NCBI RefSeq assembly: GCF_001194135.2
Contig: NC_068989.1
Location: 17,646,229-17,698,604, forward strand
Direction: 5' to 3'
Origin: Octopus bimaculoides
Taxonomy: Eukaryota
DNA: 52,376 nucleotides
Of the stretch, positions 10,643-44,215 are shown piece by piece; position 1 is the stretch's first letter, and each line of letters begins with the position of its first letter. Under the pieces are notes generated by a model, which had not been told where the DNA came from, searched no databases, and was given only the letters and a program-made list of their open reading frames with translations. The position numbers and the translations under genes were made by a program.

Positions 10643-10818
10643 TTATTTTCCAATGTTGCAGTTGGCTTTCATTGGCCAATCACACACTTGTAGTGCCTCG
10701 TTGAAATGCAAGTTTCCAGGACAATCTTTTCTGTAGGAATGATTCCAATCACACTGGTAAAAATGTCTGCAACTTTGTGGGTCAGGGAAAAGGCCGGATT
10801 CCATAGGGCACGTGAAGT
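10643..10818 (-). CDS. Coding exon 11 (terminal): chitin-binding type-2/peritrophin-A domain and stop
   Basis: caatag|(D)[58 protein letters not shown]-x12-C-x5-C-x9-C-x12-C-x7-C with typical DP..C..FY.C and CP..L.F.....CDW motifs; phase-1 acceptor. Confidence 0.9.
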
Positions 10819-11294
10819 CTATTGAAAAAGAAAATAAAGAAAAAAATATATATATAAACACACAATATATATATGTATGTATATGCATATACATGTATAC
10901 AAGTATGTGCATATATATGTATACATGTATGCATGTGTGCGTGTATATATATATATATACATTTTTATATATAACGTTGACCACTAACGTGGACATTCAA
11001 TGTGCTAGAAATACACAAGATGTGATCCATTTCTAGCACATTGAATGTCCACGTTAGTGGTCAACCTTATATATAAAAATGTACTTTAATCCCCTGAGAT
11101 TGCAGATACTGTTTCTGAATCTCTTTGATTCTTTAAACGTGCTAGCTTCCTGGTAATTAATCGATATTAATTAATATATGATTTTTTNNNNNNNNNNNNN
11201 NNNNNNNNNNNNNNNNNNNNNNNNNNNNNNNNNNNNNNNNNNNNNNNNNNNNNNNNNNNNNNNNNNNNNNNNNNNNNNNNNNNNNNNNNNNNNN

Positions 11295-11332
<38 letters not shown>

Positions 11333-14300
11333 CACATAGACATACACGTACATACATACATACATACATACATACATACATACACACTTACATACACATA
11401 CACACACGCGCTACACACACATATTTGGATACAAGCACATTTACACATTTTATTGACATTTTAACCGACGATCATTCAAGCATATTTAAATGATTACTTT
11501 TATATGAGACTGAACACAAAGAAAGTCTGTAAATACAGTCTTGAAAAGCATTTACCGATTTGCTTTGCTGTCAGAAATCTCTAACTTTTTTTATTTATTT
11601 ATTAGACTCTGCTCTGTATTATTTCAGTTAGGTAAGCTGTACTATTTATGTATATAAGTACTAAAGATAAACTTTAGAAAAATATAACTCCTGGGGGTCT
11701 ATTCATCCGACTAAAATACTTCAAGGCGGTGCCCCAGCATAGCCGCAATCTAATAACTAAGACAAGTAAAAAATGAAAAATAAAAGCTAAAATCGGATCC
11801 GGCAGATATACTTATCAAATAGGAAATGTAAGAATGAATAAAGTTTCGTACTTACTCATTTGGGGGATTTTAACTGCAAAAGAATAAGAAAAATACAAGC
11901 ACTATTTTAGTAATTGTTTAAGATGTTATGTTCTACGTATTAACATTTTATAAAATGCATATACAAGGGGGTGCTGAAAAGTTTCTGGTTTGGGGTAAAA
12001 GAAAACACAGGAGGATTCACACACTTATTGCAGCGGGCCTTCAGTTCTTCTATGCTCAGTAAAAGAACTGTGACCCCTGTGACGTGGACCATACCATTAA
12101 ACACACTCTGCAACGTCTTACCCTCGCTATTTCCCCCAGTATAATCGAAACACAATGTAACTCTCACAGCCTACGGAAATTTCTCCTGGAAGTGACTTTC
12201 TTTACCATAAGATGTAATACCATGGATCATGATAGCACCTACAAATGACGTTCTTAGCATTTTTACTATTTCTATTATGTTATTTTATTATCACTTTATT
12301 ATTTTAACTTACTTCCTCACATGTTAATTTACTAACATTTGGTCTCTCTGATGAAGCGTTTAGGCTCAACCATCCAATGTTTGTTCAACATTTGTAAAAT
12401 CCCTTTATATCACTGGCGTGATGCGGAAAAGTTGGAAGATTGGGCAACCCCATGGTAGAAACAGCTGTAAAAATTTAGTATTTATACACTCATTTATTCT
12501 TATTCGTTTATTTTTATTTTTCTATTTATTTACTTATTTATTTATTTGCTTATTTCATTCGTTTATTTGGATCAGTTATACATATGATTGTAACCAATTA
12601 ATAAATAGATATAATTGAATGTTTACAGGTTGTTGTTTGTCGATTGTTTATCCTCTCCATTTTCCTCTATTTGCCTTATAAATCCTGGGTGTATTTCTGC
12701 TTTACCCCCACCCATACCTAGTATTCGATTGCGATATTACCCTGCAATAGTAAGCACTTGGATATAAATGCGTAGGTATACATCTAGTAGTATATTGGAT
12801 ATTTACTATCCCTTAGATAGTTGCATAACCTCTAACACATACATATATATATATATATGTATGTATGTATGTATACACATATATACATACATGTGTGTAT
12901 GTATGCATGTATGTATACACACACATATATACATACATATAATATATGAAATATTATTAAGTAAGAAAATAGAGAGATTCAATGGATAAAATTGATTTAT
13001 TAATTAACATTGCCTACAATTGGTACATGTGTGTGTGTGTATGTATGTATGTATGTATCTATGTATGTATGTGTATATATGAAGAGATTCAGTGTAAAAC
13101 GCAATAAGCACCAAAATAATGTATTTGTAGAAGTTGTTATCAATCTATTGTCCATGGAAGTGGGAACTTTACTGCATAATTAGTTTTTTGCTCTACGAAT
13201 CATATCTCCAGCTCTTTCGTGTTAAAAAGTAACTTCTTTCGTAAAACGCACTAAACGCTACTACTCTTTCGCCACAGAGCGAAATATATCCACCTGACCA
13301 ATCAGGGTGCTCGATTTGTCGAACAATGCAAGTTCATGAAAGTATTACATATATGTAACTGACAGGTGGGAGTTCAGTCAATAGTCAGGCCAAATTTGAA
13401 TATCAAAGTAGAATATTGAAAACGGTAAGTAACGAAGCTGGATTTTTTTTATTAACCCTTACATATGTTTGTAATCGCAAGCATTAATATTCTAAGTTGA
13501 TCTAGAATAATATAGTTAAACAGTTTATGGCTAGAACAAAAATAAAATATGCGTGAGTGTGTCTGTGTGTGAATGAGCACGCGGTACTGCGCGTGTGTGG
13601 TATGTGTGTGTATATGCGCATGTGCATGCGAGTGAAAAAAGCGAGTGTGAGTGTGTGTGTGTATGTGCGATGTTGTATTACATAATGTGTGTGTAAATCC
13701 GTCTGGTTGCTCTATTGCCCCCAATCTGCATTCTGCGTGCTGGAGCATATATGGTGTGCGTGTGTATGTGTATGTGTGTCGCGCGTGTGCATGAGAGAGA
13801 GAAATGAGCGAGTGTGTGTGTGAGTGTGTGCAATGTTGTATTACATAATGTATGTGTTTGAAACTATTATGGATTAAGGGAAATATTTACGTCTACTAAT
13901 ACCTTTAATTCATCTCTTACCTAAAAACTCAAAGTTGTTCTGAAGTCTATGGTGCGATAGCAATATCTAATAAAACTAAACACAATTTGAGTTGTCTCCC
14001 GTTCTTTATGAAATGATTAAAATAGTGTCATTGCGTTAATGCAGTATTTTCCTCATAGCGTATGATTTTTAATTAGAGTTTTGATACTCATTTATATTGG
14101 CATATCTGTATGTTTCCATACCTTGTACCATTCTTGCTTAAAGAAATTTTATACATTAATGTTAAAGGAGATAAAATGTTAAAGTTATTTGTATATGAAA
14201 AGTTAGTGTATTTACGGTAAAATAAATATAATCTATTTTATAAGACCTTTATTTTTTTGTTCAAATCAATCTTTGAGGTTGGTGGAAAGAAATGTTTGTT

Positions 14301-17300
14301 TTGTTTTAGAACTATGAAGAAAATTCATTAAAGGAATCTAAATTTGAAATATCGAATAAGCTTATCAAAATATTAAAGTTATATGCTTTTGGAATATAAG
14401 TTTTAAGTTAATTTCTTGATTAGAAAGAATGATACCAACAGGACACGGTAAATTTTCCGAACAGTACAAAAGACGCAAGTGAACTGAAAAGGCTGCAACT
14501 GGGAATTGAAGTAATATTTGGATTTTGATTCAACCGGATCTTAAATCATACGCCATCATGCAAATAGCATCAAATTATGAAACACATAAAAGTTATACTT
14601 ACCTTCGCAGTAATTCCCATTAAAACCAGATGGGCATTTGCAAGTGATTGGGTTGGCATTATAAAGGCATGTTCCTCCGTTACGACAAGGGTTTGTTAGG
14701 CAATTCACAGCTGGATTCTTTTGATCACAAAGCTTACCATACCATCCATTAATGCAAGAACAAGAGAAGTCATTCGTTCCGAATCTGCTACAGCGGCCGT
14801 TGTTAAAACAAGGGTTCGGAGTACAAGGATCACTTTGAAATTCGCATCTCTGTCCTGTCCAGCCTTGTCGACAAGCACAAACGTAGTTGTTTCCCATAGG
14901 AAAGCATTGTCCACCATTTAAACAGGGGTTTGTTGTACAAGTCCTTACCAAACTCTCACAATTTTTTCCAGTCCATCCATAGGTACATGTACAGGTGTAA
15001 TTATATGTATCTTGTACATAACATTGTCCATTATTCAAACATGGTTTTGAAGCACAAGGATTCCTAATCCCACAGTCTCGACCCCCAAATTCTGGAGTAC
15101 AGTCGCATATTCTTGTGTTTAAGTTACAAGTTCCACCATTTTGACATCTTGGAGAGCACCGATTTGAAAACTGGCATTTATCTCCGAAAAAGCCATTTAG
15201 ACATATGCAAGTAATTTGATTGTTTACCATCTGACAACGTCCACTATTATGACAGACATTTGGATTAGACGCGCAAGCATCTCTAATTGAACAATCTGTC
15301 CCTAGAAAACCTTGAGGGCAGTTGCATCTTCGTGTGGTTACGTCACAAATTCCTCCATTTTGACATGGTGAATAGCATTCGGTCGTGTTCTCGCACCTAT
15401 CTCCGTAATATCCACTGAGGCATAAGCAAGTGATTTGATTGTTTACAAGCTGACAAGTTCCACCATGTTGACAGATATTTGGTGTGCAAAATGGTTGTTC
15501 ACATCGTTGTCCTGTGAATCCAACAGGGCAAAGACAAGTGAATTGAACTCCATTTGGATAGCATGTACCACCATTTTGACAGGGTGAGGTTTGACAGGAA
15601 TTAATGAGAATTTGACATTGTGTACCAGTAAATCCAGTTAGGCATTCACATTTCGCAACAAAGTTAGTTGTAGCACATCGGCCACCATTTAGGCAAGTCA
15701 CTGAGCGACATTTATCTTCAAATTGACAACGATTACCGTAAAAGTTAGGAAGACATTGGCACATAAATGAGGTTCCCGCATTCGAACATTTACCACCGTT
15801 CATACAAGGTGCTGACAGACATGCTGAAAGAACTAGTTTCAAAAGCAAAAAATAGAAAAAGAATAAATTAGCAGGTGATCAAATAAAATTGTTAGGAAAT
15901 AAAACTCTTTTATGAGAGTTATTAAAATACCATTACAAAAAGACTTAATTTTGTAAATGAGTTACAAGTGAACGTGATTTTTTTTCATCTTGAATGAATA
16001 AAAAATTTAAAGTTAAGTTAGCATAGTTATGCCTTAATATCATTTTTACTGAGTGGTATATCAGAAGCCAAAGTAAAACTGTCAATGTAAAACTCATAAC
16101 ATCTCATGTGAAACTACTAACTGAACTTACATTTCATCAATAAGACGTTAAAAACATATTAAGTTCAAATATGTTTGATATAACGTCAATTGGTAATATA
16201 AATAGAGCTGTATTAATATTATAGTTATATAATTAAGGCGGCGAGCTGACAATCGTTACTGCGTCGAGCAAACGAGGAAAATGATGAGCAGTATTTCTTC
16301 TGTTTTTACTTCTGAGTTCAAATTCCACCAAGGTCGACTTACTCCTTCATCCATTTGAGGTCGATAAGACACACTATTTGAACACTGGGGTTGATGTAAT
16401 CGACTTAACCCCTCCCCCGAAATTGCTGGCCATATGTCAAAACTTGAAAGCAATTTTATAGCTGTACTAAAATTAGAGTTGTTATAATTCTATTAATACT
16501 GTAGAAAAGAAGTTGTATTGATATTAGGTTCAAAATTTGGCACACGGCCAGCAATCTTAGAGGAGGTAGTAAGTCGAATGCATCGATTCCAGTGCTCAGC
16601 TGGTATATATTTTATCGATCCCGAAAGGTTGAAGGGCAAATTCGACCTCGGGGGAATTTGAACTCAGAACGTAAAAAAGGATGAAATACTGCTTAGCATT
16701 TTGCCCGGTGTGCTAAGGAGCCTGCCATCTCGCTGCCTTACAATCGGCTATAATATTAATACCATTTAAGGCGGCGAGCTGAAGTATCGTTAGCATGCGG
16801 TCAAAATATCTAGCAGTATTTCGTTCGTTTTCACCTTCTCAGTTCAAGTTCCGCCGGGTTCGACTTTGCCTTTCATCGTTTCAGGATCAATAAAATAAGT
16901 ACCATTTAAGCACTGGGGTCGATGTAATTGATTTATTCTCTCTCCTGAAATTGCTGATCTTGTGCCAAAATTTGAAACCTATATTATAGTCGATGACTGT
17001 CAACTAATTGTTTAAGAGTAGTCGTGTGACTATATTTCCTTAAGTTCTCGTTAAAGAGACAAAAATTAAGCAGACAAAAATTAAAACACTTTTGAACCTT
17101 TTTACCTAAAGTTGTTATATAAACTTTGTAAGTTGACAAGAAATGTTCTAAGTGAAAGCTTAGTTCTGAAAATTCTTATGAAATTCTATTGCTACATGAG
17201 CGTCTAATTTTCCTTTGAAAATCAGGTTACAGCGCTCGATTTTATTATAACCTGAAGGCAAACACGTCGAATTCGCCTTGAGTATGAGAACAGATGACAT

Positions 17301-20300
17301 GTATTGAATTAAATCTCACGTGCTTCTTAATCAAATGAAAAATCAACTGTTTTTTCTCTCTTAGAATTAGATAATGTAAAATTCAGAAACGACCGTCTCT
17401 TTAAATTACTGGAATCTAGTTATATTACGTCTTCCTAAAAAACAGAAAACTGTGTGTAAACAATATTGTTAAAACTCTCAGTTACCACTTTGACATCTGT
17501 TTCCGGTAAATCCAGGGACACATTTGCAAATGAAATCATTGACGCGATTCATACATGTACCTCCATTGTAACATGGCTGTGTTTCGAAAAAGCATGGTTG
17601 CATCTCTAGAAAAATAGACAAACATTTAGTGATGTTTCAAGACATAAAGTGTGTATTTCAAAATATATTAAATTTTTCGCTTTCCTTTATTTCAAATCGG
17701 TATCGCGTTATGAGGTTATCTCTTAATAGGATATAATTGTATTGGTTCAGTCCAAGAAGAAAGTGAAGCTATTTAGTTCCTACACCTTTTGTAACGGTGG
17801 TGGTGGTAAGAAGTCTGTTTCCCAACCACATGGGTCTGGATTCAGTTCTACTGCGTGGCATGTTGGGCAATAGTCTTCTACTATAGCCTTAGGCCCACCA
17901 AAGCCTTTGAGTGGATTTTGTAGAAACTGAGAAGAAACTGAAAGAAGCTCATCTTGTGTGTATGTGTGTGTGTGTGTTTGTTTGTGTGTGTGTGTGTGTT
18001 TGTGTCCGTTTGTGCCCGTTTGTCCCCCACCACCGGTTGACAACCGGTGTTAGTGTGTTTAAATTCCCATAACCTTGAGGTACGGCAAAATTGACCGATA
18101 GATAGTACCAGGCTTAAAAATAAAATAAGTATTTGTATCAATTAGTTCGACTAAAATTCCTTGAGGCGATGCCGCATGCCTAGAGGTAGATGGCTGCAGT
18201 TTAAAGACTGGAACAAATAAACTTTAAAAGATAAAAGATAAATGGTCACCCATAAAAAGACTAGATTCCAACACGAACGAAATACTCCTTCATTTTTACC
18301 GTACTACTACTAATTATAACTGACTGAGTTATCTAATTCTGTAGTAGTGACATACAATAATTCAGACTGAAGCAGTTACAGTGAAGCTTCATGACTATAA
18401 ATGAAGACATGGTGTCAGGTTACAAAATTCTGAGAACTTAAGAAATATCTTGATGCTCTATCGACACAATATCTTGTTGCTTTCAGAGAGAACGGGCCTC
18501 TAACCTTTTCTATTCTTCTTGTATTAACGGATAGAGTTAGAAGATATTAATACAGGTAGCGGATCTTTTCTGTTTGGCTGCATCTGATGAAATTTTAAAG
18601 TTTAACGAACATTTAAAAATTATGGTGTAGTGATGTAATTTTCCACGTTGAATCTCAGGAGCTAATTCACTTTTCCAGAAAAATTGTTTTAAAAGCGTTA
18701 CAGAGATTTAAAGTTTGATCATTTTTACCCAGTCAGACAACTGGGTTTAGAAGCTGCCAATTTTGCGTGTTGTCGGTTGTAATCAAATGAAATATTGGTG
18801 GAATTCTACTTTACGCATGCCATATAACCCCTCATATTTTTTTTTATTTTGGGGAATTTACACACAGGAATTCGTAGAATTATACACCCTGCCAAATATT
18901 AGTGCGTGATTTAAGGCCTATTTAGCTATCATTTTCAGTACATCTCACAGCCATCTCATATCTCATGTGTTTTGAGTATTCAATATGCGAAAAATGACCA
19001 CGTGGGTAGGCAGTTTGGCAACAGCTTAGCTTATTACTATGGAAACAAGTTCCTATATGTCTGTGGCTTTCGATCAACTAAAATTATCCGAAATTTGCAA
19101 AATTTAAAAGTTGTTAAATCTTTACTTATTAATTTATGGCGAAAATGAATTTCCTATCAATGACAACCATACAAAAATACACCAATATACCGAATATGAA
19201 ATCAATTTAAAAAAAAAATTAAGAAATTAAAAAGTGGCAGCCAAACAAAAATGATCCCCAGTAAGAGAAAGGGAAAGGATTGGAAACAGTATTTAAACCG
19301 AGAAGTCTAAGGGAGAGAGAGAGAGGAGGGAGGTGGGAGAGAGAGAAGGAGAGAGAGAGACCTGCATTAAATGTGCTCAAGTGGAGATTGCACAGGGCTA
19401 GAAATTTCAAAACAGAAGGAATATTTTTCTCTATTCAATGACTTGTTTGGCCTCTAACTAATGAGATGTTAATTTGATTCATTCTGTTTTCTTCTTCGCC
19501 TTTATAACCAGTCAGAGTAAGGTGGTCATTGAAAGATAGATAAAGACTAGAAAATTTAATATGTAAATATTGTTGTTAGGTGAGCAATTTTTATTGGATG
19601 CTATCAAGATATTTAAGAGAGTATTGTGTCAAACTAAGTATGGAAAGCCGATGCGGAAGTCAGAATTATTTTACGGTCTTGAAAATAAAACCAGTTTTTG
19701 GAATGAAGCATTGATTTGCGTGACTGTAAGTGCATTATTTTTAGAGAGTGAAGTTTTAAGCTGTGCGTTGTTTCACAGTATGGGGTTCTGGTTCTTAAGA
19801 AGTATAGTACGCTTCTTGTCACTATCGAAATGCTAACGACGTTTCAATTAATAAAAAGAATTACTAAGGTTGTAAATAAAGCTTTTGTGCGGAAGTCAAT
19901 CACAGTCTTCAGAGGTAAATATATGCTGTTTCAATTTTTATGTTTTTATTAAAGGTAACATTGTACCGACTGAATTATCACAAGGATTTTCGTCTTTATT
20001 TCCTCCTACCGAACGAAAATATTAGCTCATAAAATTTAATAAATAACTCACTTTTCTCACACTGTTGGCCTGTAAACCCGTGCATGCAGTTGCAGTTATA
20101 ACCATTAACTCTCGAAATGCATGTGCCTCCATTGTAGCACGGTTGTGCATCACAGTAATCTACACCTAGAGAAAATATAATATTATACAGTATTTAGAAG
20201 CTTTATTTTGTTTGCTTGATACCGAGAACTGAAAACCATAGCATGTGAAATGAACCATCGAAAATGTGCTTCCGTCTGTTGATTATTTTGCTTTCAGATT

Positions 20301-23300
20301 TTCTTTTCGCTTTCTGTGTTTGATTTTCCTAATAAACTTTTAAGTGGCGAGTTACCATACTGATTTGGTATTAATTTCATGTGAATATAGGTTATATTTC
20401 CTGATAGTAATTTGTCAATATCTCACTCAAATATTATCTTAAATTGAATATTTCTGCTATAACCGGGTTGGTAGTTTTCCTTTGATCTCTGACTTCTTCG
20501 GGCGTCTGACTTGTGTATTCCACATAAATGAAAACTCTTCATCCTTGCATTGATTCTGCTTTCTGTTCTTTTCTTTTCTGTAGCTGAAATAATGAAGTTC
20601 TGCTGTTCAGAACTTCCAGTTGAACCTTCCCCTACTCACATCAATACGTTATATACATTTTTATTTTCGTGTCTCACTCTGTTTCTCTTCGTTAAAGCCC
20701 CACTGAGCATAACATGTAGTTATTAAAAAGACCACGTTCCTATCCCTTAAATCTATATTATTAAGTCCACATTTAGCTCACTTCCTACTATCAAAATTCC
20801 ACATTAACAACACCATTCTTTATCCCATTCTTCAAAACTGAGATAACCGTGTAGGTCTAGCATTAGTCTTCCAACAAATGATTAAAAATGGTTAACATAT
20901 TTCTTAGAAATTTACTAAGAACAAATCAACTTGTATATTTCCAATTAAATCTTATTGAAAATTCTTGGAATATTCCATATTCCATTTTTACTAGCCGAGA
21001 ATCAATTTCTAACTTCATGTTTTACTAATATATAAAATAAAAGAATATATTATTAAGTTCACATCGCTTGGCGTAAAATCCCGCATTGTAACGACATTAG
21101 AAGTCCTTGGCGAGATTAGTGCATGAATCAGCATTTAGACATGTCTGGGTGCTACACATATTGTTGGCTTGTTCAAGACAAGTGGGTATATAGGGAGATT
21201 AGTTATCAATAAAACAAATGTAGCCAGTCACAGAAAGGCGGTGAGCTGGCAGAATCGTTAGCACGCCGGGAAAAATGCTTAGCGGCATTTCGTCCGTCCT
21301 TACGTTCTGAATTCCAATTCCGCCAGGATCGACTTTGCCTTTCAGCCCTTTCGAGGTCGAATACTGGAGTCGATTTAATTGACTTATCCCTCCATCGAAC
21401 TTACTGGCCTTGGACCAAAATTTGAAATCAATATAGTCTGTCACACATATTTTTATCACTAAAGCTGTTTTGTGAAACACTGGCGGGATAATACAGTTCT
21501 ATATTTAAGTGAAGAGGAATTATGTACATTATTTACATTTGACGGATATTTTTACTCATCTTGTTTGTTGTTAGCATAACTTTTCGGCTGATATACCCAC
21601 CAGCCTTCATCAGGTTCGAAATTTTCCCAAGACACCTGATGAAGGCTGGAGGATATATCAGCCGAAACGTTGTGTTAACAACAAACAAGATGAGGACAAA
21701 TATCCATCAAATGTAAATAATGTAAATAATTGGCGGGATATTTCAATAAGGAATGCAACAAGGAATCGGCAAGGATATGATATGTTACAAGGATATGATA
21801 AAATATATTTATTAAATAAATAATATATCTATATGAGAATATATTAAATAGTATATCATGTTAAGAAAATTAGAATGTATTACATCGAATTAAATGAAAT
21901 TACGTTAGTAAATTAACGAGTCGTAATAAAGCACCAACTAAGATTGGTTTTTACACTAAAATAAGATAGTTTCTGTAGACAAAAGAATTCAATGGATACC
22001 AATAATTTTTTTAACTAGACATATTTAGTGGCTGTCATTATTTCTCAATTTACCATGGAGCTTGATGACTAAATTGCTTGTAATACTTACATTTGATAAA
22101 ATGTTTGCAATACTTTATCATAATGATGTAAATTGAAATAGAAATACTTCATTCTTACCAATTTCACATCTGAATCCAGTGTAACCACTCGGACACATAC
22201 AGGAATAGTTACCAATACCGTCAACGCATGTACCACCATTTAAACAAGGAGTTGTCGTCAGACTGCATTCGTCGATGCCTAAGATAAATTAATATTAACC
22301 CATTCTTTCACTTCGTTAATCTTTGCTTTGAAAACTCATTCTAATTTGGAACAACACCAGAGCTATTACAATATCATGCATGTCTACATTGTTAGTTTTT
22401 AAGGGACTATTGTTAATATCTTGTTGAGTATATGAGCAGATAAATTCAACCTGCCTAACTAACATGTAGGTAACAACAAATTTTTCGACCGTTCGATCAT
22501 ATCTACTCCTAGTATTAGATGTTAACTTTTAACTAGAGTAATAGCTTTTAATTTTTCACTCACAATAAATTATTATTGTCCAGTCAAGGAAATGACCGAA
22601 ATACTCTGCAACCATTATTTGGAATATTTCTGAGGAGATAAGTAACACACTAGCAGGTGAAATATATGTAGAAGCAGATGGCTTGTTATATTAAATATAT
22701 AATGTACATAGAAGTGTAAATCTGAGCGTGCATATGTTAAAGATGTCCACGTTAAAAAGAGTTTATTCTATGAAATAGATTCAATTAGCAACATTGTTAT
22801 AGCTAAAATAAAATACATATTGATAATTTTGTGATTGTTAGGATTAAACAGTGTCACCAATTGTTTCAAATAAAGTTTACAAGTTAATAAGAAAAAAATA
22901 AATACCTTTATTACAATATTGTCCTGTGTATCCTGGGTTGCAGTAGCATCTAAACACAGAACCTTGCACACTACAAGTCGCACCATTTTTACAGGGTGAG
23001 CTACGACATACATCAGCTGAAAAAAATGTTGGAGATACATATCTTTTACACACATTTTTCTCTATCTATGTAAATAATGAAATTCGATAAAATGAAAGTG
23101 AATCAAATGCATTAATTACAGCAATGTATTTACAATCTCACAGAAAGAAAATTTGCTGATATTTGTTGATTTGTTTTAACAGAGATTTACATGCTTTATA
23201 TTGAATTGAGCTATCGCCAGTCGAGTCGACACCGTGTCAGTCTAGAGTTGAAAGTGTCAAAGCATCCTTTATTATCACGAGTGCTACATTGAGAATAATG

Positions 23301-25342
23301 ACAAAGATATTCAACTCTCATTCATTTGAATGCTTTGCTGTAAATATGTATTATGTGACGGTGTAGCTTTCTGCTGTTAGGAGGAAGGGCCCTGTAATAA
23401 TCCTTTCTACTATTGGCACAAGGCCTGAAAGCTTTTTGAGGAGGAGGGTTTAAGTCGATTACATCGACCACAGTGTATAACTGGTCCGTATTTAATCGAC
23501 ACCGAAAGGATAAAAGGCAAAGTCGACCTCGGTGGAATTTGAACTCAGAACGTAGCGACAGGCGAAATACCGCTAAGTCCAGCGTGTAGCCCTGTAATAA
23601 TAACGAATGACTACAGCTTAAAGAGACATTCTTTTCAAAAGAGCAAATCCCACATTAAGACAGTGTTGGCTATTCCGAAAGAAAATCGTATGAAAGGAGA
23701 GTTAAAACTTTTAGAAACAGTATAGTATGTATATGTCATTGAAAAAAACTTATCAAAATTATAGTATGTTTCAAAATTACGTTTCTGGCGGATATTCATT
23801 ATTCAAGGCGATATGTATTATAAGAGAGGATAATAAAGCATAAAATTCTGAGATACTAAGTGCTTTCCTCAAGGCACTAACGATTGAGGGAAGTGAATCA
23901 ACTTCACCAGAGAACAAAGAGTCGACCCAATATAGCGCTCCCCTTATTTTCTATTACAATCTCATACTTCTAACTCTTACAAATACTTATGTTCTATAAT
24001 ATTATATAAGAATTTACCACTGGAGTGGCACAAACAGTAGCGTATCTAATTAGATATTTTACCCTGGCTTCGTTCAAATTTCGCCGAAACCAATTTGTAT
24101 TGTTTTCTACTTTTTCCGAGATTGATAAACTAAAAATAGAAACGAAGCTCTGTGTACGCCTTAAATTACAATCGCTATCTGTGAATCATACTAAGTATAT
24201 ATTCATCTTTAAAGGGTATGAAACTGTAGAATTGTCTGAAATAAAGTCTCTTCATAGACTTGATGTGTTATTTGTGCTTCGACAAGCTTCCGCAATACCA
24301 GTGAATATTTCATTCCTGTTTCCGATATATATCTCAAGATACGCATTTCGTTTAAGCAGATGGCAATTAGATGCACGTTATTGACAAGCTAGTATTGAAT
24401 TGTAACATATTTTATCGAACTCAGGAATTTATAAGGTAAACTGATCGAGGCGAAATTAAAGTTCATGATGTAAAGAGACATAAATAATCTATAATTACCA
24501 TTGAGGTTACAGAACGGACCAGAGAAACCAGCCTTGCAGACTTTTTGACCGTTGTTATCACACATAAACCTGACTTGCTCAATGATGGGAATTTCACACT
24601 TCATCGCGCAATTAGGACCGTAATAGCCTTGGCTGCAGTAAGTCTGAAATAAAACAATTACACAAATATTCTAAGACTTTAGAAAATGGCACTTTAAAGA
24701 TTTATGCTATTTTGGTCGCAAATAGATCGTATTGAGGATAAACATGTTTATTGCACAATTTTTGCATCTCTAGAGGTGTGAGTGATATCTAATTCAAGAG
24801 AAGGTTGGACAGAAAAATAAATGCCAGCTAATTTCACTCAACCATTCTTCCAACTGCACGCCAACTGCTGCATGATACATGAAGATCAGAAATGGATGAC
24901 CAAAGATTTGATCAGTAATATTGGGTTTATCAATGTCTCCGAGCAGAGCCTAACAGTGTCCGCAACACAAGCAGCAATAAAAAGGTACATTAATACAAAT
25001 ATGAGTGATGATACTCGCAGATCAACAAAAGTAGGGCAAGAAATATCAAGATAATTTCAAGATAGTTCATAACTTTAAGACTTACTCGTATTTGATATGT
25101 CAGTTGACTACCAGTTCCATATTGACCAACCGTAGTTTGCATTTGATAACTGGCTTCTTCGATGCTCTTGTGGGGCATATTATATCCGCTGTTGTAATCA
25201 TATTTATCAATCAATTCTTGGTTGTCTTTTGCAGTAAAAGAAACAATAAATTTCTGAAAAACAGAGGTTAATGAGTATATATTCTACTAGATATAGATAC
25301 TATTGTAAAGAGTATAGATCACTAGAAATATAAGGTTATATA

Positions 25343-29257: not shown

Positions 29258-31534
29258 GCGCGCGCGCACACACACACATAAATGGAGAAGGATTATGATA
29301 TACTATTGTTATATCATGATAAACACTCCTCAGTGATATCGAACACTTACCTGAAATGGCTGAAGAACCACAAGTGTCATAGGGTTCCGTTGTGACCCAA
29401 CGTATGACGTATTTAAGTTTATGATGTTATCACCTGAAATTAATTTTTAAAAAATGAAATAAAAATTTATTGTATCAAAAGAGTGAAAAGCGATTCAATT
29501 AGGCTCGACATTTAAAATATTAAAATATATACTAAAGAAAGTATTTATAATGGATATGGACGAAGTGAATGCTATAAACGTTCAATGCCAAGGGACACTT
29601 TTGTTTAACGAAGTTGATTTTTACATTTCCAGTTTCTCTGCTTTTTAGGATGCTAAATTCGAAGAAAATGGTAGAATGTTGAAATATATTCTTTCTCCCT
29701 ATCTAATTTGTTTTCTGCACGTTCCTACTTAAAATCTCTGTGGTTCATAAAAAATAACAATAGTAAATTAACATAATGCTGGCAACACTATTTATTTAAA
29801 ACTTCACCGCTACTCTCGTCTTCAAAAAGCAGACGATATTCTGTCGTATCCTTTTCGGCGTTTGTGTTTTTCTTTCAAACCGTCTAACCGCCATTTCTAT
29901 ATTATTTATTCAGTCCTGTATAGTTTTTTTTTCTTTCAACTGTTATGTTAAAATAGCTCTATCTAACACCAATTGTATATTCTGATGCTCTTTTAACAAT
30001 CATTTTAGCATCTGTTCTTAAAGTCTCTCTCTTACGTTTCTATTTATTTTCATTTTTATTTTTGCACTTTTCGATCATCCAATGGCTATATTGATATGAT
30101 AGCGGGGAACCAGCTAAGTACTGGTCCATAGCCAAAACGATTAACTCATAACAGTCCGTGACTACGTAGTTCTGTGATTACACAGTAACATAATGTAACG
30201 GTTTCTCATATGGACACAATAGAAAACAGTCAATTGAATTGACTACTCTTCACGGCTGTCACTTTACTGCCGTGGGAGACTGAAAGGCAATCTCGGAAGG
30301 ATTTTAACTACACATAATATAATGCAAAATCATTATGGATTTGACGAGTCATACGCTGCTTTGCTGAGCAGTGTTCAAATTCTCTTGCGGATAAATCTTT
30401 ACCAGTGAATGGGATGAAAAGATTTAGCTTAACGTTACAAAAACCGGAGTTAAAGCATCAAACTTATACCTCCTAGTAATTTATGAAAGGATTAGAAAAT
30501 AAAATATTGACCTTGAGGCAAGGTAAATACACCAATACACTACTTAAGACTACAGTTAAGCTTCTACAGTGCTAGCTCTGCAAGCATCGAGTTTAAATTC
30601 TAACTCAAGTCATTTAATTTTTTTTTAAATGGCATCAAGAGAAACGAGACTGGGTTGCTGAGAAAGTTATGAGTATTTTAACATTCCATTTCATTTTTCC
30701 GCAAAAGTACAAGGAAATGGTACTGAACGGAATATTTTAAAATGTGACGAACAATACTGATGACGCCTCATAAAAATGTCGGTTAAATAGGCATAAAAGG
30801 ATTTTGCTATTAAATTGTACAAATAATGTATGCTGATTATATTAGTACACATATTTGGGTTAAATATTTATTATTACTGATTCAGTATCAAACTAATTTC
30901 ATGGTCTTGGTCAACTGCTAAACATTGTAATCATACAACTATATGGAAATATAACTTTTGTATGGAGCCAAAACTGATTAAAATCACAGCATATAACGCA
31001 CTGTCGTCAAAAACAAAACAAAAATACAATAGTTTGAAACACTTTAGTTTCAGCATAGTGCCGACAATTTGGAGCTTCTTTTCATGTTTCAGAATATTTA
31101 TCAAACAACTGAAATGATTTTCTAGTAAGCATTGTAATACAAAATCCCATTTATTAATGATGGTAAATAAGGTCTTTTGCAAGAGAGAGCTTAAAAACGA
31201 TCTATTAAAAATTATACTGATATGAACTGCATGCAAGTTCTTTCTTTCCTATGCTTGTTAAACAACTTGATTATTTTGGTGGGACCCTTCGAAAGAGATA
31301 GTTTCATAGAAAGTTTTAATAATGTGGAGAATCTAGAATGCGCTTGTTTAGTGTGAGTTCGCTCTTGCCGATGAGACATGATGTTGTAACTAGGACATGT
31401 GTGTATGCATGTATGTATGTATGTATGTATGTATGTATGTATGTATGCATGTACATATGTATGCACCCATGTATACATATACATACATGCGCGAAATTAA
31501 AAATATAAAATGGCGTCAATTTACCCTTCGCATC

Positions 31535-35132: not shown

Positions 35133-36800
35133 GTATGTATGTATATATATATACATATATGCGTATATAATGTTAAATGTCGAAATAATGTCTAAGCAAA
35201 TCGTTTGAATACTTCATTTACAATCATTTCATCATAATTTAATATAATGAGTCTTCCATAATGCTGTAATCATACCGGCAACTATTGATTAAACTTCATG
35301 CAGCATGTGGGATTTTTTCATAACACATGTTGATCATGACTCGTGGGAATTTCGTAAAAGGAAATTTTAGGATTCATGTTCAACATTATTAGGCAAGAAA
35401 TCCTACATGACACAGGAAAATTAATGATTGCAGCATTACGTAAGACCGGTTATTTTGAAATATGATGAAACAATTGTAATCAAAGCATCGAAAGGAGTTG
35501 ATAACTCCATGTCTACTACTACTGGTAGAACGAAGGAAGAACGTTTTGTGGGAGTTTTGCCCCATGCGTAAAATGGAATTGAATATAAATCAGAAAGCCA
35601 ATGCAGAAGATTTCTCTGAGCGAATGCTGTCCTAAGGGGTATTCAACGTGGACAAGCGGTGGTTGATGAAGCAAAATTATCGGCTGAAGTTAGATAGACA
35701 AGAGATTCCAGACAGAGAAGTGCGCGAAAGCATCTTTTGACCCTTACTGTGACGCTCATACTCTAGAAAATTGTGAGTCTTTTGTGATTAGAGACTTCTT
35801 TAATTAGGATGTCAGCGCACTTGTTCTCTTATAGAGAGGCCCAGGTCTTAAAAAGAACCTAAACTGCCTCTCAAAGAATTAATTATAACACAAAAATATT
35901 ACACTATTCTTATGGTAGTTTTGAACTTAAGACCAAGGATCATATTTACTAGTTTTTAAAAATTTTTTATGTATAACGATGTACTTACCGATAACTCCTG
36001 TTTCTCTCGTCCCATATTCACACGATACTGTGCTACTGTCAGGTCTGGCACAAACATTGAGACTTGTTTGACATTGTAAACTTCCGAAGTTTGAGCAATG
36101 ACGTCTGTTGGCCAGTAAACGATTGAAATTTTCAAACTTGATTAGCTTCACATCAATAACATAGTTTGCTACAATTGGCTGCAAAGGAACAATAAGAACC
36201 CTTTATTAGATATGTTTAGCACACTTAACATTGGTGCATTTTATTATTGATTGAAAATAAAATTTCTTTTAACTCTTTACGATCATTTTCATTGTATACA
36301 AAAGGGCATAATAGTTAGTCTGGAGTAATATTCATGCCAGATATATAAATACAAACTGTTTAATACTCATTAAATGTTAGATTTACCTTTCTTATGATGG
36401 CGTGTTAATGTTACAAAGGCGATTAATGATGGTGGATCATGTATTTTGTACTTCAATTAATTTATGGGAGAGATACTGTTTCGCATCCTTCTAGATTGAT
36501 AGCATAAGCACGGACACAACTACATTAGGTTTGACAACGTAATGGCAAGTTTATAGCAACAGTAAGTTTGGAAACACAAGTTTGATGGCATAACTGCAAT
36601 AATTATGACAATTAAGTTTGAGAACATAAAGTTCAGTATGTTTAATAGAATAACTACAAAAATGTTATATATTTATTTATTGTTATAACATAAACACAAT
36701 GTTTGATAACTTAACTACAGACGATATATATAGTTCCCTTTCAATATATGTGTCATGTTTCGATGTAAGAAATCAATACAAATAAAATTAATGCGATATG

Positions 36801-39064: not shown

Positions 39065-39112
<48 letters not shown>

Positions 39113-39767: not shown

Positions 39768-39811
<44 letters not shown>

Positions 39812-42800: not shown

Positions 42801-44215
42801 TATAAGTTATTGGGCTAAAGAATTGCGGTTTGTGATATTGTAAAATGTGATGGTTTCAAACACGGATTGAACCTAGTCCACTTCGTTCCGAGAGAAGTTA
42901 CCTTTTACTACAGTGCTTTCGCCTAAACATATCACAAATAAATTCTTTAAATATTAAATTGATTAATAATTCAGTATTAGATTTAGTTAGAATATCGAAT
43001 GAAAAATGCCAGTTGAATAATTTTGCACATGAGTCTATATTCAAGCTAGAGATTCTGTTCATTATTATTATTACTGTTGTTTATCCACATTGTACATAGT
43101 CGGTCAAACGGTGAGGTATGACTACATCTCCATCTACCTGAAGACAATGCTTCACATAATGTTCAGTCTCAAACTATCACAAACAATGTCATTAATTTCA
43201 TGCAGAAAATGATGTGCTATAGTCTATCATAGCAAACATTTAATCAATATACAAACGTCATTAATGAATACATGTACTCGTAAATTCAGATAGATTTACG
43301 CGTACATAAATAAACACAGATACACACACATACGTACGTACATACATACATGCGTACATACATACACACATACATACGTACATACATACATACATACATG
43401 CATACATACATACATACATACATACATTTTCATAGAATTACGTAATATCAATGCATATGTCGATAGTAACTGAAGTAGTTATACGAGTATGTATGTATAA
43501 TCAGCTATGATTATATACGTCTAGCCATTTTATTACTGTGGCGACAGATTTCTGTGGATTTTTTTGTGTGTGTATGTGTGTGTGCGCGCACGTAGTGTGT
43601 GTGCGCATGAATAAGAGAGAGAAAGAGTGCGCGTTTTTATGTCTTAAAACAAGCGACTTACAAACACACACGCATATAAATACTCCAATTAATACATTTA
43701 ATAATATATTCATATAATAATCACCCATGGCTAGTTTCTTATCATTACATAAACATAAACTGCTGATTGTATTCGCACAAAGTTTTATACACCTTGATGC
43801 GTTCCTGCACGTTTACAGGTGTAATATTTATTTATAAATGTACGCAAATAATTAAAGGTGTTTGATGGTCGTATATACATACATACATACATACATATAT
43901 GCCTAAATACATGATACATATATCTGTATATGTTTATGAATTTGCACTGTCACTGAAACGCAGCATAACATCTGTTTATATTGTAATAACGAGAGGTGAT
44001 GCAATCTATGTGCATGTATTTATGTATATGTGAGTCTGTATATATGTGTATATCCATAAGTGCATTTTTATGTAGATGAAATATGTATATGTGTTTACCC
44101 GTGTGTGCACGTACATATGTGTTCACATTTTAAGGAATGTAAGGCTTAGGAATAGAATACTTACAGAGATTGTAACAGCAACAAGGAGCAGAAGACTACT
44201 AGTTAACTGAAGCAT
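10643..44215 (-). CDS. 11-exon gene for a predicted secreted Delta/Serrate-like protein: SP-C2(MNNL)-DSL-EGFx15-ChtBD2, 832 aa
   Basis: Coding exons (minus): 44165-44215, 35989-36178, 29351-29433, 25086-25253, 24499-24643, 22906-23016, 22159-22278, 20052-20165, 17486-17605, 14603-15823, 10643-10818. All junctions are GT-AG, phases are 0,1,0,0,1,1,1,1,1,1, total length 2499 nt, one open frame ending in TAA. Confidence 0.88.
10958..11083. repeat. Near-perfect hairpin: 55-bp arms, 16-nt loop
   Basis: Arms 10958-11012 and 11029-11083 are reverse complements with one mismatch. Confidence 0.9.
11960..12060. mobile_element. Mariner-like terminal remnant
   Basis: ta-caagggggtgctgaaaagtttctgg resembles a mariner TIR start; no partner TIR found. 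Confidence 0.35.
14603..15823 (-). CDS. Coding exon 10: 11 tandem EGF repeats (EGF5-15)
   Basis: 1221 nt, phase 1-1, within the 430-aa ORF 14556..15848. ctttcag| acceptor and GAAG|gtaagt donor. Confidence 0.95.
16235..16979. mobile_element. Three SINE-C copies in +/-/+ arrangement
   Basis: 16235-16451(+), 16528-16740(-), 16768-16979(+), all with the aaggcggcgagctg head and gccaaaatttgaaacc-type tail. Confidence 0.85.
17486..17605 (-). CDS. Coding exon 9: EGF4 (K)[39 protein letters not shown]
   Basis: 120 nt, phase 1-1, tttctag|...|gtaact. Confidence 0.92.
20052..20165 (-). CDS. Coding exon 8: EGF3 (G)[37 protein letters not shown]
   Basis: 114 nt, phase 1-1, ctctag|...|gtgagt. Confidence 0.92.
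21054..21167 (-). pseudogene. Decayed EGF pseudo-exon in the intron between EGF2 and EGF3
   Basis: aacaag|(A)[36 protein letters not shown]. 114 nt, phase 1-1 geometry, in-frame TAA, Cys5 to Tyr, and AT instead of GT at the donor position. Confidence 0.8.
21235..21428 (+). mobile_element. SINE family C copy
   Basis: ggcggtgagctggcagaatcgttagcacgccggg...ccaaaatttgaaatc. Other copies at 23400-23587(-), 28060-28235(-), 40950-41165(-), 42165-42355(+). Confidence 0.85.
21491..21730. mobile_element. Palindromic Penelope-like insertion with 10-bp TSD and a hammerhead-like motif
   Basis: Direct repeat tggcgggata at 21481-21490 and 21731-21740; inverted arms about 21518-21614 and 21635-21731; CTGATGAAGGCTGG..TCAGCCGAAACGTT. 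Confidence 0.7.
22159..22278 (-). CDS. Coding exon 7: EGF2, calcium-binding type (G)[39 protein letters not shown]
   Basis: 120 nt, phase 1-1, IDEC...D....Y calcium-binding EGF consensus. Confidence 0.93.
22906..23016 (-). CDS. Coding exon 6: EGF1 (A)[36 protein letters not shown]
   Basis: 111 nt, phase 1-1, six-Cys EGF, GT-AG. Confidence 0.92.
24499..24643 (-). CDS. Coding exon 5: DSL domain [48 protein letters not shown]
   Basis: Six Cys spaced C-x8-C-x3-C-x11-C-x7-C-x8-C as in Jagged/Delta DSL, with YYG and CD.NG.K.C motifs. Confidence 0.93.
25086..25253 (-). CDS. Coding exon 4: C2/MNNL C-terminal part [10 protein letters not shown]...GSQLTYQIR
   Basis: 168 nt, phase 0-0, ttttcag|...|gtaagt. 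YQIR matches Jagged1 FEYQIR immediately before the DSL domain. Confidence 0.88.
25540..26418 (-). mobile_element. Penelope-like element 3' portion (GIY-YIG C-terminus plus terminal repeat)
   Basis: Minus frame 26418-26200: ..[31 protein letters not shown]...[19 protein letters not shown].., matching the PLE pattern pvarHF..gHs...E..lI..l....GlN, followed by a low-complexity 3' region and terminal repeat. Confidence 0.8.
27330..27835 (+). mobile_element. R4/NeSL-type non-LTR retrotransposon, restriction-like endonuclease remnant
   Basis: [24 protein letters not shown]...[37 protein letters not shown]...LIVRAL. Confidence 0.82.
28242..28453. repeat. Compound trinucleotide microsatellite (ACT)n-(GCT)-(AAT)n-(AAC)-(GAA)n
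   Basis: Directly visible; adjoins a long N gap. Confidence 0.95.
29351..29433 (-). CDS. Coding exon 3: C2/MNNL middle (G)[27 protein letters not shown]
   Basis: tttcag| acceptor, |gtaagt donor, 83 nt, phase 1 to 0, bridging the flanking exons exactly. NP motif corresponds to Delta NPIRFPF. Confidence 0.82.
31597..31748 (-). mobile_element. Penelope-like terminal repeat copy
   Basis: Close match to 25540-25690; runs into an N gap. Confidence 0.65.
32021..32915. mobile_element. Rearranged DD37D (maT-type) Tc1/mariner transposase remnants
   Basis: [12 protein letters not shown]...[15 protein letters not shown]-type segment with 37 residues between the second and third catalytic positions, carrying stops and a frameshift. 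Three overlapping-homology copies: +32021-32340, -32400-32750, +32755-32915. Confidence 0.8.
33792..34559. mobile_element. About 770-bp imperfect foldback element
   Basis: Arm pairs include gtagtgaggaaagg/cctttcctcactac and tttctaggatatcccagctattgg/ccaatagctgggatatcctagaaa; symmetry continues inward to about 34147/34174. Confidence 0.8.
35229..35468. mobile_element. Degenerate palindromic MITE-like element
   Basis: tcatcata..taatgctgtaatcat / atgattgcagcattac..tatgatga plus inner arm similarity. Confidence 0.5.
35989..36178 (-). CDS. Coding exon 2: N-terminal part of Notch-ligand C2/MNNL domain
   Basis: ttgcag|[63 protein letters not shown]|gtaagt. Resembles Delta FELKL..F.N..GLL.N..CC...C.T.F.VC...C.YG...T.V.G. 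Confidence 0.88.
37560..37700 (-). mobile_element. Penelope-like terminal repeat copy with hammerhead-like fold
   Basis: Minus strand TCTTT-CTGTTGAA-GAGC-GTA-GCTC-GAAACGTC-AAAGA. Confidence 0.6.
37946..38150 (+). mobile_element. SINE family A 3' half
   Basis: Matches the tail of the 3049 and 40214 copies. Confidence 0.75.
39959..40968. repeat. Degenerate ~43-bp minisatellite inside a ~250-bp tandem duplication
   Basis: Repeating gacatctgt..tatttgatctagcatt units. Duplicated blocks are 40089-40720 (SINE-interrupted) and 40721-40968. Confidence 0.8.
40214..40592 (-). mobile_element. SINE family A, full length, 13-bp TSD
   Basis: atctcaaacggca at 40205-40217 and 40594-40606. Confidence 0.9.
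44165..44215 (-). CDS. Coding exon 1: signal peptide [17 protein letters not shown]
   Basis: ATG at 44215, hydrophobic core, and a phase-0 donor TCT|gtaagt that matches the phase-0 acceptor of the C2 exon. Predicted cleavage near PIVA^NY. Confidence 0.8.

What the first reader, a model, noticed from the sequence alone, without database searches (positions are those of the whole stretch)
10643..44215. Secreted Notch-ligand-like protein ending in a chitin-binding domain (C2-DSL-EGF15-ChtBD2)
Seen in sequence: 11 exons splice in frame into an 832-aa protein with signal peptide, C2/MNNL, a DSL with exact Jagged/Delta Cys spacing, 15 EGFs, and a peritrophin-A/CBM14 domain followed by TAA. There is no hydrophobic TM stretch or cytoplasmic tail. 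Established knowledge: canonical Delta/Serrate are type-I membrane proteins needing an intracellular tail for Mind bomb/Neuralized-driven endocytic pulling; soluble ligands tend to be inactive or inhibitory while immobilised ones can activate; the ligand C2 domain binds phospholipid. I know of no described DSL + chitin-binding fusion, but could not search. Inference: the protein may be tethered to chitinous matrix (in a cephalopod, beak, radula, sucker cuticle or gut lining) as a naturally immobilised ligand or decoy, or act as a long EGF-rod linker between membranes and chitin.
Basis: partly seen in the sequence, partly recalled or inferred. Interest (0 to 1): 0.93.

Follow-up and report, generated by a model that had tools for sequence, protein, structure and literature searches.

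The report
Secreted octopus Delta-like chitin-binding protein
An expressed Octopus bimaculoides gene encodes a secreted protein that joins the head of a Notch ligand (C2 + DSL) through 15 EGF repeats to a chitin-binding domain. It belongs to an octopod-only tandem gene family, but its Notch-contact surface is not conserved, so it is more likely a chitin-matrix protein than a signalling ligand.

Summary
On the minus strand, 12 exons (not 11) give a 2526-nt CDS of 841 aa (not 832). The product is identical to XP_014781344.1 / UniProt A0A0L8GGG7 of Octopus bimaculoides, named only by automatic annotation ("fibropellin-1", "Delta-like protein").

All assembly gaps lie in introns. Single mRNA contigs from two independent runs carry exon 1 through the ChtBD2 exon. 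All 42 raw junction reads join EGF15, microexon and ChtBD2.

The architecture is signal peptide, C2/MNNL, DSL, 15 EGF, CBM14, stop, with no TM segment. It is one of a tandem, octopod-restricted family with variable EGF number.

The DSL keeps the exact Cys spacing but replaces the conserved Notch-binding face (RPRDD-F-GHY becomes [10 protein letters not shown]). EGF1-2 are ordinary EGFs, not the Delta/Jagged type.

Best reading: a secreted chitin-anchored EGF-rod matrix protein that reused a Notch-ligand head. A chitin-tethered Notch ligand or decoy is possible but unlikely. I found no paper describing it. It is a new variant of a known kind.

The parts
44165..44215 (-). Exon 1: ATG at 44215, signal peptide [17 protein letters not shown]; donor GT
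   Evidence: The mRNA loose end at 36178 reads into this exon.
35989..36178 (-). Exon 2: first part of the C2/MNNL domain ([12 protein letters not shown]...GVI)
   Evidence: Carried by the same contigs as exons 9-12 in X2 (2967 nt) and X3 (2748 nt).
29351..29433 (-). Exon 3: C2/MNNL, middle part
   Evidence: The loose end at 35987 reads into it.
25086..25253 (-). Exon 4: C2/MNNL, last part, ending ...LTYQIR
   Evidence: Pfam MNNL covers residues 25-164.
24499..24643 (-). Exon 5: DSL domain (six Cys, spacing 8-3-11-7-8) with a diverged Notch-binding face
22906..23016 (-). Exon 6: EGF1 (phase 1-1)
22159..22278 (-). Exon 7: EGF2, a cassette exon skipped in isoform X3 (801 aa)
20052..20165 (-). 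Exon 8: EGF3, a cassette exon skipped in isoform X2 (803 aa)
   Evidence: Included in the X1 and X2 mRNA contigs.
17486..17605 (-). Exon 9: EGF4
   Evidence: Joint 17486 to 15832 seen in X1, X2, X3 contigs and in 7 X23 reads.
14603..15832 (-). Exon 10: EGF5-EGF15 (1230 nt).
11856..11873 (-).
   Evidence: 42/42 junction reads plus the contigs. The linker is conserved in paralogs and in P0103.
10643..10818 (-). Exon 12: ChtBD2 / peritrophin-A (CBM14) domain and the TAA stop. The 3'UTR continues below 10643 to at least 10500.
   Evidence: Pfam CBM_14 57.2 bits. PDB CBM14 matches include 6G9C at 1e-12, tachycitin, chitotriosidase and squid beak CBP-3. mRNA evidence.

Best explanation
This is a secreted, roughly 90-kDa extracellular-matrix protein of Octopus bimaculoides.

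Shown:
- It is transcribed as one mRNA encoding signal peptide, C2/MNNL, DSL, 15 non-calcium-type EGF repeats, a short linker and one CBM14 chitin-binding domain.
- It has no membrane anchor.
- It sits in a tandem array of paralogs that differ mainly in EGF number, and cassette EGF exons are alternatively spliced.
- Its DSL domain keeps the fold-defining cysteines but not the Notch-contact residues.

Inferred mechanism:
- The C-terminal CBM14 fixes the protein to chitin fibrils of a chitinous secretion. The tissue is not identified. Candidates are the sucker lining, foregut cuticle, radula or beak, and the egg envelope.
- The disulfide-locked EGF array acts as a stiff-but-extensible rod of adjustable length.
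- The diverged C2-DSL head supplies the second attachment. It could bind the apical membrane or lipid of the secreting epithelium, as C2 domains of Notch ligands bind phospholipid. It could also bind other matrix molecules, possibly EGF repeats of neighbouring copies.

The result would be a chitin-to-cell or chitin-to-chitin cross-linker built on a co-opted Notch-ligand scaffold, not a canonical Notch signal.
For: - Gene model and mRNA. Single contigs of 2967 nt (X2) and 2748 nt (X3) span exons 1-12. 42/42 junction reads join EGF15, microexon and ChtBD2.
- Secretion and no anchor: the only hydrophobic stretch is at residues 1-25, and the stop follows the CBM14 directly.
- CBM14: 57.2 bits in Pfam, and it aligns to solved chitin-binding modules.
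- C2 + DSL ancestry: Pfam MNNL 32.9 bits and DSL 39 bits. The AF2 model's 24 best PDB matches are all C2-DSL-EGF fragments of DLL1, JAG1, DLL4, JAG2 and Serrate, with E from 4e-16 to 3e-10.
- Loss of the canonical Notch face: columns that in 110 other DSL proteins are R (91/110), D (87/110), F (64/110), G (106/110), H (103/110) and W (105/110) read P, I, Q, V, R and F here. The substitute motif is conserved among paralogs. F207A abolishes JAG1-Notch1 binding (PMC3888931).
- No Delta/Jagged-type EGF1-2: no EGF_DL_JAG or JAG1-like_EGF2 hit, although 14 and 12 relatives have one (alignment).
- Structural-protein hallmarks: tandem duplicate about 20 kb away on the same strand. Family members range from 429 to 1441 aa, differing in EGF number. 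Phase-1 cassette EGF exons. No cbEGF consensus.
- Expression: contig depth about 3700 in one sample against 259, 59 and 4.9 in others.
- Precedent in the same species: octovafibrin, an EGF29 rod with binding domains at both ends, is the load-bearing egg-tether fibre (PMC10336842).
Against: - No tissue label could be read for the expressing samples, because run identities are coded. Association with a chitinous structure is therefore untested.
- Chitin binding is inferred from sequence only.
- The head domain's partner is unknown.
- A diverged DSL face does not prove loss of Notch binding. Nematode DSL proteins are also divergent, and octopus Notch could have co-evolved.
- The AF2 model has only moderate confidence (mean pLDDT 65.7, pTM 0.49).
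- Contig depth is a poor measure of expression.
Confidence: 0.55

Rival explanations
1. Chitin-immobilised Notch ligand or decoy. The ChtBD2 fixes the protein to chitin. Cells touching that matrix either have their Notch pulled and activated without ligand endocytosis, or have Notch blocked by a non-pulling competitor.
For: The head is truly homologous, over its full length, to the Notch-binding C2-DSL module. Eight EGFs carry the O-fucose consensus and three the O-glucose consensus typical of Notch-pathway EGFs. DSL proteins without a TM domain act on LIN-12/Notch in C. elegans, and DSL ligands without the DOS-type EGF pair exist (PMC2504490).
Against: Every residue of the conserved DSL Notch-contact face is replaced, including the F207 equivalent (Q here) and the G-H-Y motif. 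The Delta/Jagged-type EGF1-2 pair is absent. The C2 domain has lost two of the six cysteines, including the CC pair. Rapid tandem expansion, variable EGF number and very high expression in one sample are unusual for a developmental signal.
Confidence: 0.12
2. Chitin-recognising defence or barrier protein. It would be a secreted lectin-like molecule that binds chitin of fungi, parasites or prey cuticle, or lines the gut as a peritrophin-type barrier. The EGF rod and C2-DSL head would present it to haemocytes or epithelia.
For: The CBM14 is most similar to the chitin-binding modules of chitinases, tachycitin and peritrophin-like allergens. Lineage-specific tandem expansion and sequence divergence are typical of immune and barrier genes. 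The protein is secreted.
Against: It has a single CBM14, whereas peritrophins and agglutinins are usually multivalent. There is no evidence on tissue or on induction by challenge. The long EGF rod is more typical of structural matrix proteins such as octovafibrin.
Confidence: 0.15
3. Annotation or assembly artefact. On this view the ChtBD2 exon belongs to another transcript, or a TM-encoding exon is hidden in an assembly gap.
For: Six or more N-gaps lie inside the gene span. The chromosome-scale record carries the same gaps, because the gene span is an identical 33,573 bp.
Against: Full-length mRNA contigs from independent runs carry exons 1-12 with no unexplained bases between exons. 42/42 raw junction reads link the microexon to both neighbours. 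The stop codon is in the ChtBD2 exon and is followed by 3'UTR in the same contigs. Paralogs in three species end the same way.
Confidence: 0.02

Closest known systems
Canonical DSL Notch ligands (Delta/DLL1/DLL4, Serrate/Jagged)
   Same: N-terminal C2/MNNL domain followed by a DSL domain with identical Cys spacing, then tandem EGF repeats. The best structural matches of the modelled head are 4XBM, 4CC0, 5MVX and 7ALT.
   Different: No TM segment or cytoplasmic tail. The DSL Notch-contact face is replaced. There is no Delta/Jagged-type EGF1-2. The C2 domain has 4 instead of 6 Cys. A C-terminal CBM14 domain is present.
Nematode DSL proteins without a TM domain or DOS motif (C. elegans DSL-1 and relatives)
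   Same: They contain a DSL domain and lack the DOS-type EGF pair, and soluble forms exist. They form a lineage-specific expansion: ten DSL proteins in C. elegans (PMC2504490).
   Different: The nematode proteins are short, have few EGFs and no chitin-binding domain, and are shown genetically to act on LIN-12/Notch. There is no such evidence here.
Octovafibrin of O. bimaculoides (XP_014771937.1; CTL-EGF29-CTL egg-tether fibre)
   Same: Same species. It is secreted, has a long array of non-calcium-binding EGFs flanked by a binding domain at each end, and NCBI names it as fibropellin-like. Its mechanical role is demonstrated (PMC10336842).
   Different: Its terminal domains are C-type lectins, not C2-DSL and CBM14. 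It has 29 EGFs against 15. It is not a member of this gene family.
Peritrophin-A / CBM14 chitin-binding proteins (peritrophins, cuticle proteins, tachycitin, chitinase CBMs, squid beak DgCBP-3)
   Same: A six-Cys CBM14 with the conserved aromatic positions. Pfam gives 57 bits, and PDB matches run from 1e-12 down to 0.037 for the beak protein.
   Different: Those proteins carry CBM14 alone, in tandem, or with catalytic or mucin regions. None is joined to a C2-DSL-EGF array.
Sea-urchin fibropellins (the name NCBI gives this gene)
   Same: Secreted proteins with many tandem EGFs that form an extracellular layer.
   Different: [quoted passage not shown] Neither is present here. The name reflects EGF similarity only.
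EGF-array + ChtBD2 protein P0103 from a marine metatranscriptome (ERR1719383, organism unknown)
   Same: Tandem EGFs joined to a C-terminal ChtBD2 through a homologous linker: YCEVPKMSTFTC against YCEVKIPQMNFTC.
   Different: It has no C2 or DSL. Its N-terminal region is different and Ser-rich. It is only 35% identical over the last 215 aa.

Membership tests
DSL (Delta/Serrate/LAG-2) Notch ligands | N-terminal C2/MNNL domain | tested here: met
   Pfam PF07657 scores 32.9 bits (cut-off 22.5) over residues 25-164, profile positions 4-156 of 157. The model is a beta-sandwich, and the top PDB matches are ligand C2-DSL fragments plus isolated C2 domains. It is divergent: 4 instead of 6 Cys.
DSL (Delta/Serrate/LAG-2) Notch ligands | DSL domain with six cysteines in canonical spacing | tested here: met
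   PF01414 scores 39 bits (cut-off 24.2). The spacing C-8-C-3-C-11-C-7-C-8-C is identical to Jagged/Delta.
DSL (Delta/Serrate/LAG-2) Notch ligands | [quoted passage not shown] | tested here: not met
   The sequence here is K, E, P, I, Q, V-R-F. In 110 other DSL proteins the corresponding columns are R 91/110, D 87/110, F 64/110, G 106/110 and H 103/110. F207A abolishes Notch-1 binding (PMC3888931).
DSL (Delta/Serrate/LAG-2) Notch ligands | Delta/Jagged-type atypical EGF1-EGF2 (DOS motif) after the DSL | tested here: not met
   No PF21700 or PF21795 hit for the 841-aa protein, whereas 14 and 12 of 94 relatives have one. In the alignment, EGF1-2 look like generic Notch-type EGFs. Some accepted ligands (DLL3, LAG-2) also lack this feature.
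DSL (Delta/Serrate/LAG-2) Notch ligands | Type-I transmembrane segment and cytoplasmic tail | tested here: not met
   No hydrophobic 19-mer after the signal peptide (maximum 1.08). The stop follows the CBM14 directly, and the mRNA contigs and reads show no other 3' exon.
DSL (Delta/Serrate/LAG-2) Notch ligands | Binds and activates or inhibits Notch | not testable with these tools
   This needs a binding assay or reporter assay.
CBM14 / peritrophin-A (ChtBD2) chitin-binding domain proteins | Six-Cys CBM14 domain above the family threshold | tested here: met
   PF01607 scores 57.2 bits (cut-off 22.1), E = 1.8e-15, when the domain is scanned alone. It is not reported when the whole EGF-rich protein is scanned. 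It matches CBM14 modules in the PDB.
CBM14 / peritrophin-A (ChtBD2) chitin-binding domain proteins | Binds chitin | not testable with these tools
   This needs a chitin pull-down.
Fibropellins (NCBI product name) | N-terminal C1s/CUB-like domain and C-terminal avidin-like domain flanking the EGFs | tested here: not met
   No such Pfam hits. The definition of the family is taken from PMC10336842.
Octopod C2-DSL-EGFn-ChtBD2 family (defined here) | Shared N-terminal head (at least 54% identity), the diverged DSL motif (D/E)xPxxEQxRF, and a C-terminal ChtBD2 after a conserved linker | tested here: met
   Members occur in O. bimaculoides, O. sinensis and O. vulgaris, plus an Argonauta hians N-terminal fragment. 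No closer relative was found among 1.84 billion representatives.

The most novel reading that the evidence does not exclude
The octopod family could be a natural matrix-tethered Notch-pathway ligand system. In this reading, a DSL head fixed to chitin by its ChtBD2 engages a co-evolved octopus Notch (or another EGF-repeat receptor) on cells that contact the cuticle. Mechanical resistance would come from the matrix instead of ligand endocytosis, coupling cuticle contact or renewal to cell fate.

A related variant is that the DSL head binds the Notch-like EGF repeats of neighbouring copies. The ligand-receptor pair would then have been turned into a self-assembling chitin cross-linker.
Probability: 0.1. 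Interest if true: 0.9.

Novelty: new variant of a known kind. Interest (0 to 1): 0.5.

Why it matters
This domain combination (C2-DSL-EGFn-CBM14) exists so far only as automatic predictions under misleading names such as "fibropellin-1", "jagged-1b-like" and "notch homolog 1-like". It shows the Notch-ligand head being reused outside the membrane in a lineage-specific, tandemly expanding, highly expressed gene family.

If the matrix reading is right, it adds an EGF-rod chitin linker to the small set of cephalopod chitin-associated structural proteins. It also offers a second example, beside octovafibrin, of EGF arrays used as mechanical elements.

If the head still binds Notch, it would be a natural test of the pulling-force model using an immobilised ligand.

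There is a practical point as well. Whole-protein Pfam scans miss the CBM14 and MNNL domains in these Cys-rich proteins, so domain-architecture searches under-report this family.

Tried and rejected
- Laying RNA on long stretches spanning the last introns failed twice. A sequence filter tripped at 10901-10939 and at 12869-12954. I used short stretches and read the junctions from loose ends instead.
- A protein search with the 141-aa C-terminal fragment returned nothing, for technical reasons: no shared words, although identical database proteins exist.
- A profile search with the EGF-linker-ChtBD2 alignment returned only generic short EGF proteins and no further ChtBD2 fusions. It says nothing about how widely the cassette occurs.
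- A Pfam scan of 94 N-terminal relatives found no CBM_14. The same scan also misses it in the query itself, so this negative is weak. A family-specific HMM run with --max found ChtBD2 only in the Octopus family and in P0103.
They were corrected from P0001 and from the RNA.
- I looked for paralog exons in the window flanks and found none.
- The exact-sequence look-up of P0004 failed, and P0272 was used instead.
- I could not identify the tissue. Run, sample and study names are coded, the 2015 genome paper is not held, and other cephalopod genome papers do not mention the gene.
- Alignment of the C2 calcium-binding aspartates (JAG1 D72, D140, D144) was ambiguous by one column, so I make no claim about them.

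Full report
**What is there**

The window is low-GC (36%), repeat-rich animal DNA with 15 N-gaps. On the minus strand between 44215 and 10643 there is a chain of Cys-rich open frames. Their boundaries are all AG...GT and they join in frame.

A protein search returned an Octopus bimaculoides RefSeq prediction, P0001. It matches the window exons residue for residue. The window model without exon 8 equals it exactly at 803 aa. With exon 8 the product is 841 aa and is identical to XP_014781344.1 / UniProt A0A0L8GGG7. The locus is CM046609.1:17.65-17.70 Mb of assembly GCA_001194135.2, with the same gene span of 33,573 bp.

Comparison with P0001 exposed an 18-nt microexon at 11873-11856 encoding VKIPQM. 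It has a good acceptor and donor and lies between the large EGF exon and the ChtBD2 exon. The coding sequence therefore has 12 exons, 2526 nt and 841 aa, rather than 11 exons and 832 aa. Isoforms X2 and X3 skip exon 8 or exon 7, which are single phase-1 EGF cassettes.

**Gaps**

None of the N-runs overlaps an exon. The chromosome-scale record carries the same gaps, so it is not an independent check. The RNA is.

**RNA evidence**

- At the ChtBD2 acceptor (10818), the unaligned continuation is the reverse complement of ATTACTGCGAAG|TTAAAATCCCCCAAATGA. That is the end of exon 10 plus the microexon. It appears in every contig of three runs and in 12/12 and 30/30 raw reads of two further runs.
- From the other side, the exon-10 donor continues into the microexon and then into ACTTCACGTGCCC, the start of the ChtBD2 exon.
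- The same contigs (2967 nt in X2, 2748 nt in X3) also hold exon 9, the 17486-to-15832 joint and exon 2. Their loose ends read into exons 1 and 3.
- Contig coordinates leave exactly 741 nt between exons 2 and 9, equal to exons 3-8, and exactly 18 nt between exons 10 and 12.

So there is no hidden exon, no TM-encoding alternative in these data, and no support for the direct 14603^10818 joint. The contigs run on into 3'UTR after the TAA. Contig depth ranges from about 3700 in one sample to 259, 59 and 4.9 in others. This suggests strong sample specificity, though contig depth is a crude measure and sample identities are coded.

**Domains**

- The N-terminal 213 aa score above threshold for MNNL/C2 (32.9 bits) and DSL (39 bits).
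- The last 58 aa score 57.2 bits for CBM_14. They align to chitin-binding modules of solved chitinases, tachycitin, chitotriosidase and a squid beak chitin-binding protein.
- Fifteen EGF units are present. None has the calcium-binding consensus. Eight have the O-fucose motif and three the O-glucose motif.
- The only hydrophobic segment is the signal peptide.
- An AlphaFold model of the head built on a 13-sequence alignment has moderate confidence (pLDDT 65.7). Its 24 best PDB matches are all C2-DSL-EGF fragments of DLL1, Jagged-1/2, DLL4 and Serrate.

One technical point matters for database searches. When the whole protein is scanned, Pfam reports neither CBM_14 nor MNNL. This explains why the precomputed domain list of the long isoforms lacks PF01607 while short paralog isoforms show it.

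**Is the head a Notch-binding head?**

The DSL cysteine spacing is exactly canonical. The segment that forms the Notch-contact face is not. Where 110 other DSL proteins, from vertebrates to cnidarians, read (R)-P-R-D-D-x-F-G-H-Y, this protein reads [10 protein letters not shown]. The near-invariant Trp of the last loop is Phe. The substitute motif, (D/E)xPxxEQxRF, is conserved among the paralogs, so it is a constrained but different surface.

In human Jagged-1 the single change F207A abolishes Notch-1 binding and signalling (PMC3888931). The equivalent residue here is Gln. The two EGFs after the DSL are ordinary Notch-type EGFs, not the atypical Delta/Jagged pair. The C2 domain has lost the CC pair.

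These tests lower the claim that this is a working canonical ligand. They cannot exclude a co-evolved interaction.

**Family and distribution**

A full HMMER pass of the head over 1.84 billion representative proteins found only six close clusters. All are octopod: O. bimaculoides, O. sinensis, O. vulgaris and an Argonauta hians fragment. Scores then drop to 25-35% identity with ordinary or multi-DSL proteins of other phyla.

Every full-length close relative ends in the same ChtBD2. Lengths run from 429 to 1441 aa, mostly through EGF number. The next paralog (842 aa, same architecture) lies about 20 kb downstream on the same strand. O. vulgaris accessions are near-consecutive on one chromosome.

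Outside the family, one EGF-array protein from a marine metatranscriptome carries a ChtBD2 after a homologous linker but has no DSL. This hints that the EGF-ChtBD2 cassette is older than its fusion to the DSL head.

**Literature**

No paper in the library combines a DSL domain with chitin binding in cephalopods, and none mentions this gene. The closest functional precedent is octovafibrin of the same species. It is a secreted EGF29 rod with a lectin domain at each end and forms the load-bearing egg-tether fibre (PMC10336842). Nematode DSL proteins without a TM domain or DOS motif show that secreted DSL proteins can signal (PMC2504490).

**Interpretation**

Shown: a real, expressed, secreted C2-DSL-EGF15-CBM14 protein from an octopod-specific tandem family, with a non-canonical DSL face.

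Inferred: the CBM14 anchors it to chitin, the EGF array is a rod of adjustable length, and the diverged head provides a second attachment to membrane lipid, a receptor or other matrix molecules. I rate this chitin-matrix linker reading at about 0.55. A defence or barrier lectin gets about 0.15, a tethered Notch ligand or decoy about 0.12, and an artefact about 0.02.

**Verdict**

It is a new variant of a known kind: present as automatic predictions in databases, not described in the literature searched. I score interest at about 0.5.

Noticed in passing
window 11856-11873 (-): An 18-nt microexon encodes the EGF-to-ChtBD2 linker. Equivalent linkers (VPDRQAS, VPDQQGS, VPDPQAS) are present in paralogs, and VPKMST is present in the unrelated P0103. 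One O. sinensis paralog isoform (P0008) lacks it and reads YCEGFKC.
   Followed up: partly
whole protein: Pfam scans of the full-length protein report neither CBM_14 nor MNNL. The isolated segments score 57 and 33 bits, well above the cut-offs, so the loss is probably a composition-bias filtering effect in Cys-rich proteins. Domain-architecture look-ups will therefore miss this family's long members.
   Followed up: partly
L002 (CM046609.1 17,576,412-17,646,966), about 20 kb downstream of the window gene: A tandem paralog, 'fibropellin-1-like' (842 aa), has the same C2-DSL-EGF-ChtBD2 architecture and lies on the same strand. A third family gene on the same chromosome is annotated as 'delta-like protein 1' (184 aa).
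   Followed up: partly
P0282 (O. sinensis XP_036362847.1, 1441 aa): It carries two ChtBD2 domains, at 297-353 and 1384-1441. This is probably two adjacent family genes merged into one gene model.
   Followed up: no
window 16300-17000 (intron 9): Interspersed repeat copies here have very high RNA contig depth, up to about 25,000, and many chimeric joints in all runs. These are transcribed repeats elsewhere in the genome, not part of the gene.
   Followed up: no
window 620-1057 (+) and 1327-1557 (+): These ORFs resemble the endonuclease end of a non-LTR retrotransposon (..GGWNIRTLL..VVALAETR..), judged from my own knowledge and not tested. The flanks 1-10600 contain no exons of the DSL family.
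   Followed up: partly
P0125, P0128 (Nematostella), P0126, P0134, P0137 and others: Many non-bilaterian and spiralian proteins consist of a C2 domain followed by up to 12 tandem DSL domains, often with a TM segment. They keep the canonical RDD-GHY motif that the octopus family has lost.
   Followed up: no
L003 (Logan ERR1719383 contig, 3354 nt) = P0103: An EGF-array + ChtBD2 protein from a marine metatranscriptome, organism unknown. It has a homologous linker but no DSL head, and may represent the donor type of the EGF-ChtBD2 cassette.
   Followed up: partly
window 10715 and 10879: Variant letters in the RNA. T>C at 10715, inside the ChtBD2 exon, appears in 6 of 15 reads of one orientation in X23. 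G>A at 10879 lies in an intronic repeat. These could be polymorphism or editing; I did not resolve which.
   Followed up: no
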